Part shown: positions 33,519 through 41,478 of the stretch, in pieces | Layout of the letters: each line of letters begins with the position of its first letter | Position numbering within the stretch: the first letter of the stretch is position 1 | Assembly: GCA_000388065.2 (NCBI GenBank) | Contig: KB932201.1 | From: Fonticula alba ATCC 38817 | Lineage: Eukaryota > Protista > Nucleariida | Strand: one strand, 5' to 3' | DNA: 46,947 nucleotides | Program-made: the position numbers and the translations under genes | Notes under the pieces: generated by a model | Database searches by the model: none | What the model saw: the letters and a program-made list of their open reading frames with translations, nothing else | Told to the model about the DNA's origin: nothing

Positions 33519-33575
<57 letters not shown>
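33519..33575. repeat. G homopolymer (~57 nt)
   Basis: Uninterrupted G run 70 bp beyond the surface-protein stop codon and ~500 bp upstream of the RAD54B ATG. Confidence 0.85.
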
Positions 33576-33576
<1 letters not shown>

Positions 33577-33645
33577 GGAAGTTGACGGGGAGAGGGATGG
33601 AGGCAAGAACAGGAGAAGGCAGGAGAGACTCCCCGCCTGAGCAAA

Positions 33646-36600
33646 TCAATCGATGAAATCCCCACCCCGGCGGAAGGTCTCCAGCTCGAAGGACTGCTCG
33701 CCATCGACCGGGGGCAGGCCACCAGCAGCCAGGCCGCCCTCGGGCCCGGTCCGCCCGGTCCCCGGGGAGATGACATCCGGCACCTCGCCACGGGCCAGGC
33801 GCTCCTCCAACGACAGGGCCTTGATGGACTCGCGGTGGTTGGCCTGGCGCACGTGGAAGAGGACCACACGGCGGAGAATCTGTAGCAGGATCAGCAACAG
33901 AGACAGGGTGGCCGCCAGGACCGAGGTCAAGTTGGGCAGGGCACTGCCACTGTTCGAGCCGCCGGTCTGCCGGGACCCGATGCGGAAAAGCTCGATCGCC
34001 AGCTGGGGAATGTCCTCGAAGACCATGTTCAGCAGGCCGAGGAAGCGCACACGATCCTCGCCCCGCGGTCCGAGAGGAGCATTCAAGCTCGGCAGGGCAA
34101 ACACACGCGAGCGCGAAAGCAACAGCGACTCGACGTGCACCGCGCCCAGGACACCGAGCGCGACCGCGGTCCGGGGGAAGCGCCGCGTCCAGCTATCCGT
34201 CACCGGGGCAATGGTGACGCTGGTCACTTGCTTGTTGCGGCCGAGGGTCCCTCGGCCGAGAGACCCGCGCCCGCCCTCCGGCCGACGGAGGATGGTGAAC
34301 ACATGCCACGTGAGCAGGGAATTGACCACCAGCGACAGGAGGACAATGGCCACGGAAACGATGGTCATGACGGTCAGACGGCCAGCCGCTGAGGCCAAGT
34401 CCAGTGTCACCTTTTCGGCGGCCGAGATGGAATCCACCACCAGGTCCGCCACCATGAGGCAGGCGGTCACCAGCTCCGTGTTGAAGGCAAGCGGATCCCA
34501 GTGCCGAGCCACCAGGTACAACACCAGGCCCAGGATCGCGAAGAAGACCAGCATGCCCAGGGCCACCCAACTGAAGAGGCTGCCCGCCTGCTGGACCCCC
34601 TCGGAAGCGGTGGGGCTACAGCGCCCGGTGGACGGGTTGTATGCGTCCCCTGGCCGAGCACATGTCAGGCACTGGTCGGGCCCGGGGCCGACGCAGCTGA
34701 AGCACGTTTCGTGGCATCGCCCGCAGGAGTGGCCCCCGGACCCGATTGGGTATGCCCCGGAGGTGGGACACCCGCGGGTGGAGATGCTCTGCTCGGCGCC
34801 GGCATTCTCCCACAGGATGTACCCAATGGGGATGCGTGCGTCGGAGTTGGGAGGCGTCAGACTCGAGCCCGACGCCGAGTCAGACGGACTGCTGTCGCTG
34901 GCCGCGGTGGCCTGGAGAGAGCCGCCGAGTGCCAGCAGCAGGTGCTGCTGCTGCTGCTGGTGGTGCTGTTGCTGGTGCTGCTGCTGCTGCTGTTGCTGCA
35001 CCTGGTGCTGCGGGTTCCAGGGGAGGGCGTTCCCCTGGGCAAGGTTCACGGATGCGATGCTGCCGCTGCTGCTGGCACTGCCGCCGCTGCTGGTACCACC
35101 TCGGCTGGAGGAGGATGCCGAGGAGCTTGAAGAGACTGAAGAGCTGCCGCCGCTGGTGCTGCTCCCCTCCGGCGAAAAGACCGAGGTGACCCGTCCACCC
35201 GTGGCAGCCAGCAGCGGATGGCCCGGTGGCACAAAGACCCCGGAGAAAACACGGACTTCAAATTGGGACTTCAGCCTCAGGCCCTCCAGTCGGTGGTGGG
35301 TCTCGGTCAGGTAGAAGGGCAGCGTGGCCCAGCCGGCATGGCCGCCATCACCGGCACCAGGGCCCCCGGAGCCACTGTCGCTAGGGGGGACAGGAGTCGG
35401 CGCCGCAGGACCCACCTCGCGGTACAGGAGCTCGTACACCAGCGACCCGGCCGGCACATTGCCCGACACGGCTGGTGCCTTCCATGACAGGTTTACACTG
35501 GTGCTTTCGATGGTGGAAAGACCGCCATCGGGCCCGGGGACCCAGGCGTCCGGTCCGGAGGGCGGCGTGGCCGAGATGAACCCACATGGGGGGAGAGATG
35601 TCCGGGCGATCAGCTGTGCCGCCAGGGTGGGATACCGATCCCCATGCTGGGGATTGTTTGTTGGCGAGGTCGGCCCGCACCACAGCTGCAGCATGAAGGC
35701 ATGGAAGTGCTCCAGGCCGCGCAAGGTGATGACAGACCCACGTGTGAGCCCCTCTATGAGAGAGAGAGAGAGAGAGGGGGGGCAAAGGGAGGGGAGCGAG
35801 GGGCAAGAGGGCGGCAGGGGGAGGTGGGGGGCGGAAACGCAGTCAGTGATCCGCGTGGAGGAAGGCCGAAGGGAGGTGGAGAGAGGCAATGAGGCGCACC
35901 ATTGCCGGGCACCGGATCCATGCCAAAGCCGCCGCGGCTGAAGCGAAGCTTGAACTGGGAGCAATGCGAAGGGAAGGCCGAAGCGAGGCCGGGGGTGGCC
36001 ACCAAGGCCTGGCCATCGGCCTCGGGCATCGAAGAAACCCCGACACCGGACGTGCTGTGGCTGGAGCTGGATGCAGGGCTGTAACTCCACTCGACGGTCA
36101 GACGCGAGGAGTCCGCGTTCCGGACAAGGAAATGGAATCCCTCATGGCCGAGATCGGTGTCTTTGGAGCAAAAGCAGAAGGGCCCGATTGTTGCAGGGGG
36201 CCGTCCCCTGATAGGTGAGTAAAGCATCACCAGGGGGAGGGGGGGGGGAGAGGGAGAGACAGAGAGAGGAGGGCGGAGGGCGGGGGAGCCGGAGGAGCCG
36301 GAGGAGTCGGCCACGGGAGGGCACAAAGGAAGCAGGAGCCCGGGAGGCGGACGCACCGAAAAGGCAGGAGTCGAAGTTCGCCTGCCAGACACTCAGACTG
36401 CTGGAACACTGGTAAAAGGGGGCATGCGAGGGGGATTGCGTGAAGCCAGCCGGGCAGACCGCGGGCAGAGTGGTCGCCGGATGCGCCCGAGGGAGGGCCG
36501 GTGGTGGGAGGTTCCCATCGGACGGGGGCTCCGAGCTGCCCGCGGCCGGGGGGGCTGCTTGCTCGCCAGCCAGGTGCAGGCCCTGCGGCATGGCCGGGCA

Positions 36601-39600
36601 GTCCTTCTTGCACCGCATGCCGGCCTCGGGCGCGTCAACCACCGCCGAGAGGCCATCCAGTCGGCATCGGCGCGCGGGGACCACCAGGACCGGTCGGCCC
36701 TCGGTGACTGGCGCACCGGCCACCTCCGGCGGCAGGCTGTAGCCATCCATGCACCGGCCGGTGACAACCCAGGAGTCTGGGTCGGCACCAGGGCTGAGTG
36801 ACATGGCCGGCGCAGCAGCCGGCCACATGGCGCCGTACTCCTGACTCTGTGGGGACTCGCAGAGAATGGCTATGTCGGGAGGGAGGGAGGGAGGGCACGG
36901 GGGGGGGGGGNNNNNNNNNNNNNNNNNNNNNNNNNNNNNNNNNNNNNNNNNNNNNNNNNNNNNNNNNNNNNNNNNNNNNNNNNNNNNNNNNNNNNNNNNN
37001 NNNNNNNNNNNNNNNNNNNNNNNNNNNNNNNNNNNNNNNNNNNNNNNNNNNNNNNNNNNNNNNNNNNNNNNNNNNNNNNNNNNNNNNNNNNNNNNNNNNN
37101 NNNNNNNNNNNNNNNNNNNNNNNNNNNNNNNNNNNNNNNNNNNNNNNNNNNNNNNNNNNNNNNNNNNNNNNNNNNNNNNNNNNNNNNNNNNNNNNNNNNN
37201 NNNNNNNNNNNNNNNNNNNGGGGGGGCATGATACATGGATAAGAATCGCATCCGGGGGGCTGTGTGGTTCACACCGAGGGAAGGACACCGGACGCACGCG
37301 AACAGGTCGGCCCGCCGGCAGCGAGCCTCCAGCCGGAGGTCTCGCACGTGGGCTGCTGGCCGGTCGGGGCAAAGCCAACCGGGCAGGTCACCTCGCTGAC
37401 GGGGCTCCCATCGGCCGAGGTCTCGGTAAGGCCCGGCCGAGGAGCCGGGAATGTACCCTTAATCCGCGTCGAGTCCCACAGGGACATCCCCCAGCCCACC
37501 GGCCAGGGAGTGGATGTCGCACCAGGGAAGGCCACGCTCGCCGAGCAAGTGGCGCCTGAAGTCCACGCTCCGGGGGTTAGAGGAGCCGGGGGGGGGGGGG
37601 GGGATGGGTGGCAGGGGCGAAAGGGCCGTGATTCCTATCGGAGCCCGCGACGCACCCGTCTGACAGGTGATCTTCGTGCCCACACTCCAAAGGCCGCTTG
37701 TGTGGCAGAGCCGGTGCCGGGAGGATTGCGACGAGGGGGTCAAGCTGCAAGCTCCCTCGGCGACCCCTTCGTCATCAGGGATGACCAGAGCCCCGGCTGG
37801 CGAGAGTGTGCCCATCTGCGACGACCGGGTCAACAGGCGGACCGTCAGGGAGGCTGGCGATGCCGGGAACTGCGTGCCAAACTCATCGGTGAAGGCCGGG
37901 CAAGTGGAACCTGCGATTGGGCGAAGGGGGCAACCGCCAGGGGGGGGGGAGAGAGAGAGAGAAAGGCATGCCGGTGACCATGATCAGCACAGGCCCGGCA
38001 CATGGCCACATGCGGCTGCAAGTGTCGGGCAAGGGAAGAGGCGAGGAGCAGGGGCCAGAGGAGCAACGTACGCTGGCAGACGCCACGCGGGAATGGAAAT
38101 TGCGCCTGCTCCTGAGGACCGAGATGCACGCTCCAGCCCTCGTGCGTGCATCGCCGATAGACCCCCCAGTCCTGGGCGAAAGAGGCCCCAGTGCCGGGGG
38201 TCCCGGCCACCTGGTGCCCTGGGGCGCAAATACCCGCCCGGAAGCCCAGATGCTGGGCCAGACCGCGGTTGTAAGAATCAAGCCCCAGCAAGCGGGCAGG
38301 ATGTCCTGGCACATTGACCGGCGATGTCTGGGCCGTCGAGAAGAGCACTCGCCGGACCGGTGGCCAGACCGCCGCCTGGAAGGCGTCGGCCGGGCAGGTG
38401 AATTCTGTGCAAATCCAAGGGAACGGGTCAGCAACTGGGTCCCTGTGGATGGCGGGTGTGGAAGGGCAGCTGTCGGCCGACGACATGGGGGAAAGGAGTG
38501 CAGAACATGGTGCGGGCGAAGAGGTCCAAAGCCACCGAGCACAGACGGCAAGACATACCGGGATTGCGCGCGCGCATGTCGGACCAGTGCTCGAGGGTCA
38601 CGCCGGCCAGCGAGCCAGCCGACCCCTCACGCAGGCTCAACAGACAAAGCTCCGGCCAGCCGTCATTCTCGAGATCCACATCGAGCAAGGCACGCGGCGT
38701 GCCGGAGAGCACGGGCCAGGCACCGTCGAGAGGGATGGGAACCGGCTGGGCCGCCTCCGCGTGCAGGGGAAGACGCTTCGGCGCAAGGGGGACCCACTGT
38801 TGGGCGTCGTCAGCGCCGGTGCCAGGGCCGGTGCCCGCAGTGGCCTCGCCCCGATGGTGAAGCACACGGAAGAGCGCCGCCTGGCGGGTGTCCTCCAGGC
38901 TCAGGAGGATGGCCAGATCGCGCTCACCATCGGCATTCAGATCGATGCCGGCCATGTGCACACGCAAGCGCTGCAGGCCGGCCGGCGGGGGAGTGCCCGC
39001 GGCCGGGGCCACTGGCAGCGACGCAAATACGGTGCTCCCGAGTGGCAGGGTTTCCAGGCCCATCAGGACCGCCGCACCGTCCGGGGTAAGCAGCACGCGC
39101 GACAAGTGCACATGCTGGGGCGTGGTGTCCGGCGGGACGGCGTCCAAGCTGCCGGTGCATTCGTGCCCCAGAGCCAGAGCCACGGTGATGGTGCGCACGC
39201 GGCCTTGCGAGTCGATCGAAGTCGGGGCAAAGCCGAGGGCCGAGCAGCAGGCCGGGTTCAAGGGCCCCTGGGTCAGCGGGTGCCGCAGGCCTTCGGGCAC
39301 CAGGGACACGCGCACCGTCGTGTCGAGGCCGGTATGGTAGAGGGCCAGGTGCGGGCCGCCGCGCGTTTGCCCGGTCGCCTGCGACACCTGGTGATACAGA
39401 TAGGCCACGGTGGTGGTGGCGGCATTCAGGCCGTGTGCCAGGTCCGGGAGAATGGCCATGGTCTGGAGGCCGGAGTGCCCGGCCAGTGGAGCACCCGGCC
39501 CGGGCCAGCCGGTCGGCACCCGAGCATGGGCAATGCGCTGCGCGTCATCCGGCAGGGTGGCCCCATCCGCGCGCAGGGTGGTGGCCTGGTGAAAGTGCCC

Positions 39601-40779
39601 CGATACCGGGGGGGAGGTGGCCAGCGACACCTCGACCTGGGACACGGAGTACATGTGCATGGTGGAGGTGGTTTGCCCATTGAGCCCGATGGCGAAGGCG
39701 AGGGCGCGCGGGGGGGTCGATGTGCCGGCGCCACCGGGGGCAGCTGCCAGGGCCGGCTGCAGGGCCACCAGTCCGGCGGGCAGAAGCCCCGCAAGATGCA
39801 CCAGCGGGACCAGCGAATGGACCACCCCGCAGGGGGCCAGATCCCCAGGGGCGGACCCATCCCCAGCGCCGGCATGTTCGGCGGTGATCGGGCCCAACTC
39901 GGCCGACGGGAGGCGCGTGTGCCCGGACGCCGCGCACTGGGCAGCCCCCGTGCGGGAGGCCGTGTGACTGATCGCCAAACAGATGGTGACGCCGGTGGAA
40001 TGGTCGGCGGCCGGTAGGCCCGGGCCGGAGCCCGAGGCAGACGCCGATCCGGAGGTCGAGTCACTGCCGGTCGGGGCGCCGGCGGCCGCGGTGGCGGCGG
40101 CCATCGTCAGTAGCTTGGCGCCGATGACGGCCCGATCGGCCGACTGGCGTCCGGCATCCAGGAAGGTCACCTTGGGGAGCCAGTGCGCCGGGATCGGCAC
40201 GGCATCCTGCACGATCTGGGCCTGCCAGAAGGTGCCCAAGTCGACTGACGTACCGAGAAGGATGCCCACCGATGGCTGGGACAGGGAGTCCCACCCGAGG
40301 GCCGATTGGTGGAGGGGTAGCCCCACCCCGGGGGTGGAGTCATCCCACGCGGGGACGGGCGCTGTCTGGCCGGCGAAGCCGACACGCGGCCCGAAGGGAT
40401 CGGCCGCCAAGTTGGCCGGGCTGGGCAGGGAGGCGAAGTATGTATTGGGTGCGGCCCAGACGCCGGGGTTGCCGGTGGCCAGGCGGCCGGTCAGCAGGAT
40501 GTCCGGCAGACCGTCACCGGGGGACCGAGCGCGCCAGCGAGTCGAGCCGCCGGAGCCGGCGATGAAGGGAACCGCCGAGGTGACATCGACCAGGCCGGCG
40601 GTGGAGACATCGGCCAGTGAGACCTCCCCGGGGGCAAAATTCACGTCGACCTGCCGCGCGGCCTCCAGGTGCGGCAGATCGTTGCTGCTGTCGGGGGAAG
40701 TCCCAGCCGCATGGCCGAGGGAGGAGAGCAGGAGTCCAGTGAGGAGGAGGAACACCAGCCGGGGCCCGGTGGCCAGCAT
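33646..40779 (-). CDS. Large cell-surface protein (~1996 aa): signal peptide, FG-GAP-like repeats, sushi/CCP-like modules, 2 FN3, furin-like repeat, C-terminal multi-pass membrane module with EDIPQ motif; 7 exons
   Basis: Exons 40779-38559, 38434-38072, 37910-37656, 37567(or 37555)-37298, 36869-36357, 36160-35900 and 35753-33646 total 5991 nt in frame. Signal peptide MLATGPRLVFLLLTGLLLSSLGHA. Ca-loop motifs DLNADGERDL and DLENDGWPEL. Sushi-like C.xGx...C..xGW..C segments. FN3 cores VNLSW..LY..LEGLRLKSQFEVRV. Furin repeat CGRCHETCFSCVGPGPDQCLTC. About five hydrophobic helices follow. The exon 2 acceptor is the least certain junction. Confidence 0.75.
36911..37219. other. Assembly gap (largest of nine)
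   Basis: N runs at 3558-3621, 11880-11993, 20153-20347, 26301-26402, 28627-~28722, 30031-30225, 36911-37219, 44374-44423 and 46292-46301. Each has a G or C run at or near at least one edge. Confidence 0.98.
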
Positions 40780-41478
40780 GATGGGGGGAGACCGGGCCGG
40801 GGTAGTGCCCTTGGATCGCACACGCGCACGGAGACCCAAACGGAGAACAGGGCCGAGGGGGGGGGGGGGCAGGAGCAGGGCTGCGTGCGCGGGGCCGGGG
40901 GGGGTGAAAGCAGCCGCAGCAAGAAATGAGCGGGAGAGGAGGAAGGAGGCAAGGGAAGGGCGAAAGGACAAAGGCAGGATGCCTGGCGTGAGGGCGGAGG
41001 CGAGCAGAGCCAAATGGAAGAGGAGATCTGAATCTGCCGGTCTGCCGGTCCTGGCATCACAGGGGCGCTTAATTGGCCACAATCACCAGGTGCCGATGGG
41101 CTCTCGGGCCGCCAGGAGGAAGGCCGGGGGGACGGGACGGGCGCAGGGAGGCCAGGGAACGGGAGGGGGGAGATCCTTTGTAGGGGCCACCGTTTGGGGA
41201 TGTGCGGGCTCCGGTGTTGGCGTGGAAGCGAGCCCGAAGGCGGGCTGGCCGGCCCCCGGCCCGGCCGAGCTCACAGGGGCCAGGCGCGATCTGGAGGCCG
41301 TCTTGCGTGCCGACGCGCGGGGTCGGGGATGAGCCCCCAGCCCGGGGAGTCTGACTGACAATGGACCAGCCTCGCGGCTTGGCCGTGGCACGCGCGACCA
41401 ACCCGTTCCGGTCGGATTGGGCGTGGCTCCGGGCCGGGAGAGGGCGTGCGCGAGAGTCATTGAGGGGGAGGGCAGCTG

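What the first reader, a model, noticed from the sequence alone, without database searches (positions are those of the whole stretch)
33646..40779. Adhesion-type ectodomain fused to an XK-like 'EDIPQ' multi-pass membrane module: candidate ligand-gated scramblase or channel receptor
Seen in sequence: one ~1996-aa spliced ORF with a signal peptide, ~1700 aa of FG-GAP-like, sushi-like, FN3 and furin-like modules, then about five hydrophobic helices (~34590-33820). A short cytosolic tail follows with no kinase, phosphatase or GPCR signature. The membrane part reads SWTRRFPRTAVALGVLGAVHVESLLLSRSRVFALPSLNAPL...RFLGLLNMVFEDIPQLAIELF (EDIPQ at 34017-34003). Established knowledge: XK-related lipid scramblases carry a conserved E-x-x-P-Q-L-x-L-Q helix and lack large ectodomains. 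From memory, not searched: an unnamed membrane family in early-diverging fungi has a similar W..../S...l..f.AP/EDIPQ pattern. Inference: this is a receptor whose effector is the membrane module itself, for example contact-triggered lipid scrambling, ion flux or membrane fusion. I know of no described receptor class with this architecture.
Basis: partly seen in the sequence, partly recalled or inferred. Interest (0 to 1): 0.82.

Follow-up and report, generated by a model that had tools for sequence, protein, structure and literature searches.

The report
Giant surface protein with half-XK membrane domain
A real, expressed gene of the slime mould Fonticula alba joins a huge adhesion-type outer part to a membrane part that is one half of an animal XK-type lipid scramblase, and that half is the one holding the acidic residues needed for scrambling; this layout is not described in the papers I could search.

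Summary
Window 40779-33646 (minus strand) carries a 7-exon gene. My hand-built model is identical to the annotated 1982-aa protein H696_00651 of Fonticula alba. The assembly gap lies inside intron 4. All six introns are phase 1, so the frame is kept across the gap, but no RNA covers that junction.

The membrane part (aa 1669-1926) is one anchor helix plus a single XK-related repeat of the N-terminal (ND) type. Three independent lines support this:
- Pfam XK-related hits 8 of 20 family relatives (best E 2e-7, above the curated cut-off), always on the N-terminal half of the model.
- A family profile searched against all PDB sequences finds XKR9 and XKR4 first.
- A confident AF2 model (pLDDT 85) ranks XKR9, XKR4 and XKR8 at places 1, 2 and 4 of 48,161 chains.

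The XKR 'acidic stairway' (Xkr8 D26, D30, E141) and the helix-breaking proline are conserved here as D1717, D1721, E1860 and P1863.

It is not a canonical XKR. It has one repeat instead of two, an extra helix and a 1,670-aa ectodomain. Relatives are common in Mucoromycota and protists, with varied ectodomains and sometimes a kinase. Scrambling, and any gating by ligand, remain untested inference.

The parts
33646..40779 (-). Whole coding region of H696_00651. Seven exons: 40779-38559, 38404-38072, 37910-37656, 37555-37298, 36869-36357, 36160-35900, 35753-33646 (stop included). 1982 aa.
   Evidence: The hand-built model is identical to P0001. P0001 = XP_009492807.1 of Fonticula alba.
40702..40779 (-). 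Signal peptide, aa 1-26
   Evidence: Read from the sequence: basic n-region, Leu-rich core, GHA-AG end. No signal-peptide predictor was available.
38560..40701 (-). N-terminal ectodomain region (aa 27-740). Possibly FG-GAP-like, with one clear Ca-loop motif DLNADGERD at 38943-38917.
   Evidence: FG-GAP_3 E 0.074. One motif match. Atlas feature neighbours are FG-GAP clusters at score 0.92, a lead only. The AF2 single-sequence model failed, pLDDT 31.6.
36358..38559 (-). Five tandem sushi/CCP-like 4-Cys modules (aa 741-1193) in exons 2-5. Includes introns 1-4 and the assembly gap.
   Evidence: Twenty Cys in a 5 x 4 pattern with C..P, C..SG(W) and C. No Sushi HMM hit. Intron 2 is confirmed by an RNA joint, 37908->38070.
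36911..37219 (.). Assembly gap (N run), inside intron 4 (37297-36870)
   Evidence: Flanked by C runs. The exon 4/5 join is in frame (phase 1 on both sides). No RNA crosses it.
35245..36357 (-). Two FN3-like regions (aa 1194-1340 by reading only; aa 1360-1450 with a weak fn3 hit). Includes introns 5 and 6.
   Evidence: fn3 E 7e-4, 20.2 bits, below the 25-bit cut-off. UniProt's automatic name is 'Fibronectin type-III domain-containing protein'.
34795..35187 (-). Ser/Gln-rich low-complexity linker (aa 1470-1600)
   Evidence: Composition S 35, Q 19, G 14 of 131 residues. Read laying flagged 34930-35006 as a repeat.
34618..34770 (-). Furin-like / growth-factor-receptor-type Cys-rich module (8 Cys, three CxxC; aa 1609-1659)
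   Evidence: GF_recep_IV E 0.0065. Many library hits to query residues 1-66 are Cys-rich only.
34498..34590 (-). Anchor transmembrane helix (aa 1669-1699). It carries the chain from outside to the cytosol and has no counterpart in XKRs.
   Evidence: Hydropathy. AF2 helix 2-32. It lies outside every structural alignment to XKRs, which start at model residue 33.
33817..34479 (-). Single XK-related repeat of ND type (aa 1706-1926): TM1 34479-34393, TM2 34371-34285, disordered cytosolic insert 34284-34210, partly inserted helix IH1 34209-34111, TM3 34068-33964 (EDIPQ at 34017-34003), TM4 33930-33817.
34432..34446 (-). D1717-x3-D1721 in TM1, equivalent to Xkr8 D26/D30 = Xkr4 D125/D129
   Evidence: HMM alignment to XKR4 and XKR9. 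Conserved 17/18 and 18/18 in the family. Role of the residues in XKRs: PMC8500837 and PMC12334663.
34003..34017 (-). E1860-D-I-P1863-Q, equivalent to Xkr4 E313-S-A-P316-Q (Xkr8 E141). The acidic stairway residue and the proline that breaks TM3.
33649..33816 (-). Cytosolic tail (aa 1927-1982). Acidic, with no recognised domain.
   Evidence: The tail is placed in the cytosol from the positive-inside pattern and from relative P0019, which carries a kinase after the module.

Best explanation
Shown: H696_00651 is a genuine, transcribed gene for a surface protein. Its order is signal peptide, a ~1,670-aa modular ectodomain (an FG-GAP-like region, five sushi-like units, FN3-like units, a Ser/Gln linker, a furin-like Cys-rich unit), one anchor helix, a single XK-related repeat of the ND type (TM1, TM2, partly inserted helix, TM3, TM4) and a ~55-aa cytosolic tail. 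The repeat belongs to a family widespread in early-diverging fungi and protists. That family keeps the three acidic 'stairway' residues and the TM3 proline of animal XKR scramblases.

Inferred: the ectodomain binds a surface, matrix or prey ligand. The XK-type repeat, alone or more likely paired with a second copy to rebuild the two-repeat XKR unit, forms a negatively charged, water-accessible vestibule. That vestibule thins the bilayer and lets lipid head groups cross, so the protein locally scrambles or otherwise handles lipids where it is engaged. It has no C-terminal repeat (CD) and no caspase-type tail. In XKRs those parts hold the N-terminal repeat closed, so control here would have to come from clustering or from the ectodomain.

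The confidence given (0.45) is for the whole statement. The identity part alone I put at about 0.85, and the lipid-scrambling part at about 0.3.
For: Gene and expression: the model is identical to the annotated protein. RNA contigs lie over the module, FN3, exon 5 and a spliced intron 2.

Homology to the XKR ND repeat:
- PF09815 hits 8/20 relatives. The best is P0016 at 30.1 bits, above the 24.8 cut-off (E 3.1e-7 full length; 2.1e-7 for its module segment). In the four hits with listed coordinates the match lies within profile positions 3-175 of 337.
- The profile of alignment A2 finds XKR9 (E 0.011) and XKR4 (E 0.018) as its top two hits among 177,635 PDB sequences, with both motifs collinear.

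Functional residues: D1717, D1721, E1860 and P1863 align with Xkr4 D125, D129, E313 and P316 and are near-invariant in the family. The three acidic ones are needed for Xkr8 scrambling (PMC8500837). In Xkr4 they form the membrane-embedded negative surface of the ND vestibule, and purified monomeric Xkr4 scrambles lipids (PMC12334663).

Topology: the positive-inside pattern fits, and relative P0019 carries a kinase after the module within one ORF.

Family context: relatives carry EGF, LRR, Sushi or furin-like ectodomains in front of the same module.
Confidence: 0.45

Rival explanations
1. The XK-type repeat is only a sturdy multi-pass anchor or a partner-docking platform. It might sort the protein, oligomerise it, or recruit a cytosolic or bridge-like lipid-transfer partner, as XK recruits VPS13A. 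The protein would then be an adhesion or recognition receptor without scrambling activity of its own.
For: The same module sits behind very different ectodomains, and next to kinases and 7TM-receptor-like parts in relatives. That fits a general-purpose membrane module. XK acts as a docking site for VPS13A (PMC9436381). The CD repeat and the C1/C2 cavities are missing.
Against: A mere anchor would not need near-invariant buried acidic residues, or the TM3 proline, at exactly the XKR stairway positions. The XK loop that binds VPS13A is a beta-hairpin specific to XK/XKR2, and none is predicted here.
Confidence: 0.3
2. The acidic cluster binds or conducts cations (for example a Ca2+ site or a small cation path). 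The protein would then be an ectodomain-regulated ion-handling receptor rather than a lipid scramblase.
For: The XKR9 authors note that the conserved acidic cluster of the ND could be a cation-binding site (PMC8298096). For Xkr4 a Ca2+ site at these residues has been proposed (PMC12334663).
Against: No XK-family member has been shown to conduct ions. A single five-helix repeat offers no obvious pore. Nothing here tested this.
Confidence: 0.08
3. The resemblance to XK proteins is convergent or chance: a short E-x-x-P-Q-L motif on a common helical bundle. The module would be an unrelated lineage-specific membrane domain.
Against: Two motifs match in the right order on the right helices. Pfam alignments of ~160 residues reach above the curated cut-off in a relative, and 8/20 relatives hit the same family and no other family recurrently. 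All three XKR representatives rank in the top four of 48,161 chains, each aligned on the same repeat. Forty-four of the 100 nearest Atlas clusters carry PF09815.
Confidence: 0.1
4. Gene-model artefact: exons 1-6 (the large ectodomain) and exon 7 (FN3-like, Cys-rich and membrane module) belong to different transcripts, or an exon is missing in the gap.
For: Only intron 2 has direct RNA support. There is no RNA over 35669-36411, 36563-37783 or upstream of 38220 in the runs laid. The gap in intron 4 could hide an exon.
Against: All splice sites are GT..AG and phase 1, and module boundaries coincide with exon boundaries. An independent annotation gives the same 1982-aa product. Exon 7 starts in phase with no in-frame start or signal peptide of its own. 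Even exon 7 alone fuses extracellular modules to the XK repeat, as in relatives.
Confidence: 0.07

Closest known systems
Animal XK-related scramblases (XKR8, XKR9, XKR4, XK, CED-8; Pfam PF09815)
   Same: The fold of the N-terminal (ND) repeat: TM1, TM2, a partly inserted helix, TM3, TM4. The D-x3-D motif in TM1. The E-x-x-P-Q-L motif with the proline that breaks TM3. A cytosolic C-terminus. The conserved residues are the ones needed for scrambling in Xkr8 and Xkr4.
   Different: One repeat instead of two, so no CD, no C1/C2 inter-repeat cavities and no IH3. An extra N-terminal anchor helix puts the N-terminus outside. A 1,670-aa ectodomain. No caspase-type inhibitory tail is evident. The F. 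alba sequence is below the Pfam threshold. Activity is untested.
Xkr8-basigin/neuroplastin and XK-Kell complexes
   Same: An XK-type membrane unit combined with a single-pass helix that carries a glycoprotein ectodomain (Xkr8-basigin: PMC8500837; XK discovered as the partner of the Kell glycoprotein: PMC9436381). Here the same combination is made in one polypeptide.
   Different: In animals the ectodomain is on a separate protein and serves as a chaperone or partner. The ectodomains (Ig domains, Kell peptidase-like) are unrelated to those here. Whether the anchor helix packs where basigin's helix does was not tested.
Unstudied single-repeat XK-like family of Mucoromycota and protists (AFDB and ESM-Atlas clusters; metagenomic proteins P0005-P0040)
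   Same: The same module with the same conserved positions (P..A.N, D..TD, N, W, LS..N.E..LL.S..F, AP, G, EDIPQL.IQ, S, R). It usually sits behind Cys-rich extracellular modules. The F. alba protein is a member.
   Different: The F. alba ectodomain is far larger and has no detectable sequence relatives. It has a 25-30-aa disordered insert in the TM2-IH1 loop, H for the usual N at 1820 and E for the usual Q at 1868.
Integrin alpha chains and adhesion GPCRs (large modular ectodomain plus membrane part)
   Same: The general logic of adhesion modules (FG-GAP-like, sushi-like, FN3-like) tied to a membrane segment.
   Different: No integrin alpha architecture beyond one weak FG-GAP motif. No GAIN/GPS or 7TM domain. 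The membrane part is XK-type.

Membership tests
XK-related proteins (Pfam PF09815, XKR/CED-8) | Sequence match to the PF09815 model above its gathering score | tested here: not met
   The F. alba module has no hit at E<=1, and the whole protein has none. Family relative P0016 passes (30.1 bits against 24.8), and 8/20 relatives hit at E<=1. The link is therefore transitive.
XK-related proteins (Pfam PF09815, XKR/CED-8) | Two structurally related repeats (ND and CD), each with four TM helices and a partly inserted helix (PMC8298096, PMC12334663) | tested here: not met
   Only one repeat. The four Pfam alignments with listed coordinates cover profile positions 3-175 of 337 only. Structural alignments cover XKR8 7-195, XKR9 3-192 and XKR4 108-365. 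Only ~55 residues follow the last helix.
XK-related proteins (Pfam PF09815, XKR/CED-8) | ND-repeat fold | tested here: met
XK-related proteins (Pfam PF09815, XKR/CED-8) | Acidic stairway in TM1 and TM3 (Xkr8 D26, D30, E141 = Xkr4 D125, D129, E313) and the TM3 proline (Xkr4 P316) in E-x-x-P-Q-L | tested here: met
   HMM alignments place the family's D-x-x-T-D on D125..D129 and E-D-I-P-Q on E313..P316-Q. The F. alba residues are D1717, D1721, E1860 and P1863.
XK-related proteins (Pfam PF09815, XKR/CED-8) | Other Xkr8 pathway residues (K/R134, E137, R183) | tested here: inconclusive
   By the XKR9 alignment, the positions of R134 and E137 fall on G1853 and N1856, so they are not conserved. A conserved R/K (R1909, 18/19) lies near where R183 would be, but the alignment stops just before it.
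XK-related proteins (Pfam PF09815, XKR/CED-8) | Both termini cytosolic and no large extracellular domain | tested here: not met
   A signal peptide, a 1,670-aa ectodomain and an extra anchor helix precede the repeat.
XK-related proteins (Pfam PF09815, XKR/CED-8) | Phospholipid scrambling activity | not testable with these tools
   Needs liposome or cell assays.
Single-repeat XK-like family (unnamed; Mucoromycota and protists) | Anchor helix plus repeat with the conserved positions D..TD, N, W, S, AP, G, EDxPQ, S, R | tested here: met
   F. alba keeps every position that is 90% or more conserved in A2. Library hits reach E 4.5e-7 to 1e-3. AFDB cluster hits reach E 1e-6 with TM ~0.65.
Sushi/CCP domain | Match to PF00084, and four Cys with a conserved Trp | tested here: inconclusive
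   No HMM hit even at E 10. The Cys/Trp pattern is present in five tandem units. Atlas neighbours score 0.80, a lead only.
Integrin-alpha-type FG-GAP beta-propeller | Several FG-GAP repeats with Ca-binding loops, and a propeller fold | tested here: inconclusive
   One strict loop motif. FG-GAP_3 E 0.074. Atlas neighbours are FG-GAP clusters at 0.92. The structure model failed.
Adhesion GPCR or receptor kinase | GAIN/GPS plus 7TM, or a cytosolic kinase | tested here: not met
   No such Pfam domain. The membrane fold is XK-type.

The most novel reading that the evidence does not exclude
The single XK-type repeat is an autonomous scrambling unit, or one that works as a homodimer. It would be the ancestral half from which two-repeat animal XKRs arose by duplication. 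In this family it is wired directly to receptor ectodomains, so that contact with a ligand, matrix, prey or another cell clusters the protein and triggers local lipid scrambling. That would make it a contact-gated scramblase receptor, a class not described so far.
Probability: 0.2. Interest if true: 0.85.

Novelty: new variant of a known kind. Interest (0 to 1): 0.64.

Why it matters
XK-family scramblases are studied almost only in animals, as two-repeat proteins switched on by caspases or kinases. How they move lipids is still debated.

A natural protein family that consists of only the repeat carrying the acidic vestibule would give a minimal system. It could test whether that repeat is sufficient for membrane thinning and scrambling, and whether the second repeat is mainly a brake. 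It could also show how the two-repeat fold evolved.

The direct fusion to receptor-type ectodomains (and, in relatives, to kinases) suggests a way of coupling outside contact to lipid asymmetry, in fungi and protists that lack the animal apoptotic machinery. In Fonticula alba, which aggregates and feeds collectively, such a protein is a candidate for cell-cell, cell-matrix or cell-prey contact biology.

Tried and rejected
- Word-indexed homologue searches found nothing beyond the query itself. This was true for the family alignment, for relative P0016 and for the ectodomain aa 27-1300. The ectodomain therefore has no detectable relatives by that method, and I could not obtain XKR sequences for an HMM-HMM (hhalign) comparison.
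- A single-sequence AF2 model of the N-terminal 719 aa was useless (pLDDT 31.6), so the FG-GAP propeller idea remains open.
- Pfam on the individual sushi-like units gave nothing.
- P0003 (1743 aa) carries a chance 'EIPQ' in low-complexity sequence. It was removed from the alignment.
- Read laying with three small 2012 RNA runs gave only sparse contigs, and none lie across the gap-bearing intron. The 2026 runs offered carried a different organism label and were not used.
- Literature searches for XK-related plus PF09815, Rhizophagus, or protist/fungal evolution found no description of this family.


Full report
**Observation.** The window is GC-rich eukaryotic DNA. Earlier notes of this scan name the genome as Fonticula alba, and the protein look-up confirms it.

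Reading the minus strand, I built a seven-exon model: 40779-38559, 38404-38072, 37910-37656, 37555-37298, 36869-36357, 36160-35900 and 35753-33646. Every intron is GT..AG and phase 1. The translation is 1982 aa and identical to P0001 = XP_009492807.1, hypothetical protein H696_00651.

**The gap.** The N run 36911-37219 lies inside intron 4 (37297-36870), between C-rich runs. Exon 4 ends and exon 5 begins at phase-1 sites, and each encodes complete four-cysteine units. The frame is therefore kept whatever the true gap length. No RNA contig crosses that junction. A further symmetric exon hidden in the gap cannot be excluded. It would add a module but not change the conclusion.

**Expression.** Contigs from three small 2012 RNA runs match at 99% or more over most of 33620-35668, in short contigs with several small breaks. 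That covers the membrane module, parts of the S/Q linker and FN3, but not the furin-like stretch 34692-34845. They also match over 36412-36562 and 37784-37908. One contig skips 161 bases with GT..AG ends on the minus strand, which is exactly intron 2. So the gene is spliced and expressed. Exon 7 on its own already joins FN3-like, linker, Cys-rich and membrane parts in one open frame.

**Ectodomain.**
- fn3 scores E 7e-4, GF_recep_IV (furin-like) E 0.0065 and FG-GAP_3 E 0.074. All are below the curated cut-offs, and no Sushi model hits.
- Five tandem units of four Cys with a C..P / C..SG(W) / C pattern align with each other. Exons 2, 3 and 4 hold one unit each, and exon 5 holds two.
- ESM-Atlas feature neighbours are FG-GAP clusters (0.92) for aa 27-740 and Sushi/fn3 clusters (0.80) for aa 741-1480. 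These are leads only.
- A single-sequence AF2 model of the N-terminal part failed.
- No sequence relatives of the ectodomain were found.

**The membrane module and its family.** An exhaustive HMMER search with the last 379 aa found 40 proteins at E<=1e-3. About half match only the Cys-rich stretch. The rest match the region around W...EDIPQ.

Their sequences share a clear pattern: anchor helix, P.A.N, a helix with D..TD, a helix with N, a loop with W, LS..N.E.L.LL.S..F, AP, G.....EDIPQL.IQ, and a last helix with S...S....FG...R. F. alba keeps all positions that are 90% or more conserved.

Relatives place EGF, LRR, Sushi or furin-like modules in front of the module, and one has a protein kinase behind it within the same ORF. 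Some start directly with the anchor helix.

AFDB fold clusters give many significant matches (E 1e-6, TM about 0.65) to uncharacterised proteins of 150-1260 aa. One of them is auto-named 'XK-related protein'. ESM-Atlas shape neighbours are two Mucoromycota clusters of about 910 aa (TM 0.73).

**Relation to XK scramblases.** Three independent lines agree.
1. Pfam XK-related (PF09815) hits 8 of 20 family members. The best is P0016 at 30.1 bits against a cut-off of 24.8 (E 3.1e-7 full length; 2.1e-7 for its module segment). In the four hits with listed coordinates the match lies within profile positions 3-175 of 337.
2. A profile of the family searched against 177,635 distinct PDB sequences returns XKR9 (E 0.011) and XKR4 (E 0.018) as the two best. 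The D..TD helix and the E..PQL helix are aligned in the right order.
3. An AF2 model built on the family alignment is confident (pLDDT 84.9, pTM 0.77).

**What exactly is shared.** XKRs consist of two related repeats, ND and CD, each with four TM helices and a partly inserted helix (PMC8298096; PMC12334663). The F. alba module is one anchor helix (aa 1669-1699) plus a single ND-type repeat (aa 1706-1926). Only about 55 residues follow it.

The HMM alignments put the family's D-x-x-T-D on Xkr4 D125..T128-D129, and E-D-I-P-Q on E313-S-A-P316-Q. Xkr4 D125, D129 and E313 correspond to Xkr8 D26, D30 and E141. They are the 'charged stairway': they are required for Xkr8 scrambling, and in Xkr4 they form a negative, membrane-embedded surface in the ND vestibule that thins the bilayer. 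P316 breaks TM3.

In F. alba these are D1717, D1721, E1860 and P1863, all near-invariant in the family. Xkr8 K/R134 and E137 are not conserved, since G1853 and N1856 sit at the aligned positions. A conserved R/K (R1909) lies about where R183 would be.

Topology follows from three observations:
- the ectodomain is outside;
- basic residues cluster in the TM2-IH1 loop and after TM4;
- a kinase follows the module in relative P0019.

These give five crossings and a cytosolic tail, which is the XKR ND topology preceded by one extra helix.

**Mechanism (inferred).** In XKR8/9 the closed, inactive state has TM2 of the ND held by CD elements and the C-terminal helix. In active Xkr4 the repeats separate, and the ND vestibule hydrates and thins the membrane. 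Purified monomeric Xkr4 scrambles lipids.

A protein that has only the ND-type repeat with the stairway intact could therefore perturb or scramble lipids by itself. More likely it does so as a parallel dimer that imitates ND-CD. The ectodomain and clustering would then provide the control that CD and the tail provide in animals.

Animal XKRs also work with single-pass partners that carry ectodomains (Xkr8-basigin, XK-Kell). The F. alba protein has that arrangement in one chain. None of this was tested here. I give about 0.3 to lipid scrambling or thinning activity, and about 0.1-0.2 to control of it by ectodomain contact.

The main rival is that the module is an anchor or docking platform (0.3). 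Smaller rivals are cation binding or conduction, chance resemblance and a gene-model artefact.

**Novelty.** I found no paper on single-repeat XK-like proteins or on XK-related domains in fungi or protists. Databases do hold many unstudied relatives and sometimes label them XK-related automatically.

I class this as a new variant of a known kind: a member of an undescribed single-repeat branch of the XK superfamily, with an unusually large adhesion-type ectodomain. The 'ligand-gated scramblase or channel' part is an open hypothesis.

Noticed in passing
window 38559-35753 (introns 1-6): All six introns are phase 1, and the sushi-like units coincide with symmetric 1-1 exons. This is the exon pattern associated with module shuffling in animal extracellular proteins, seen here in a holomycotan amoeba.
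   Followed up: partly
ESM Atlas shape search, row 3: A cluster of 251 proteins of about 183 aa, 99% from Nucleocytoviricota (giant viruses), resembles the module in shape (TM 0.61 by the hit, 0.46 by the query). It may be a viral copy of a single XK-like repeat, or only a similar helix bundle.
   Followed up: no
AFDB cluster hits: In relatives the same module sits inside proteins auto-named STE3-domain, Lung seven-transmembrane receptor, GPCR family 1 profile and SbsA Ig-like domain. In P0019 it sits before a protein kinase. The module seems to be a widely reused membrane unit in Mucoromycota-type genomes.
   Followed up: partly
window 33653-35314 (+): A 553-aa open frame runs antisense to the membrane-module exon. 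Long antisense frames are expected in DNA of about 66% G+C. No evidence of a gene.
   Followed up: no
window about 33540-33600: A long G run on the + strand (C run on the gene's strand) lies just downstream of the stop codon, in the presumed 3' UTR. Similar C runs flank the assembly gap in intron 4 and probably caused it.
   Followed up: no
window 34930-35006: A CAG/CAA repeat encodes a poly-Gln/His stretch in the Ser/Gln-rich linker. Read laying treated it as a repeat and cut contigs there.
   Followed up: no
window 40780-41082 (-): The open frame continues 101 codons upstream of the annotated ATG without a stop. The annotated start is favoured because a signal peptide follows it directly. 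An upstream exon or an alternative start was not examined.
   Followed up: no
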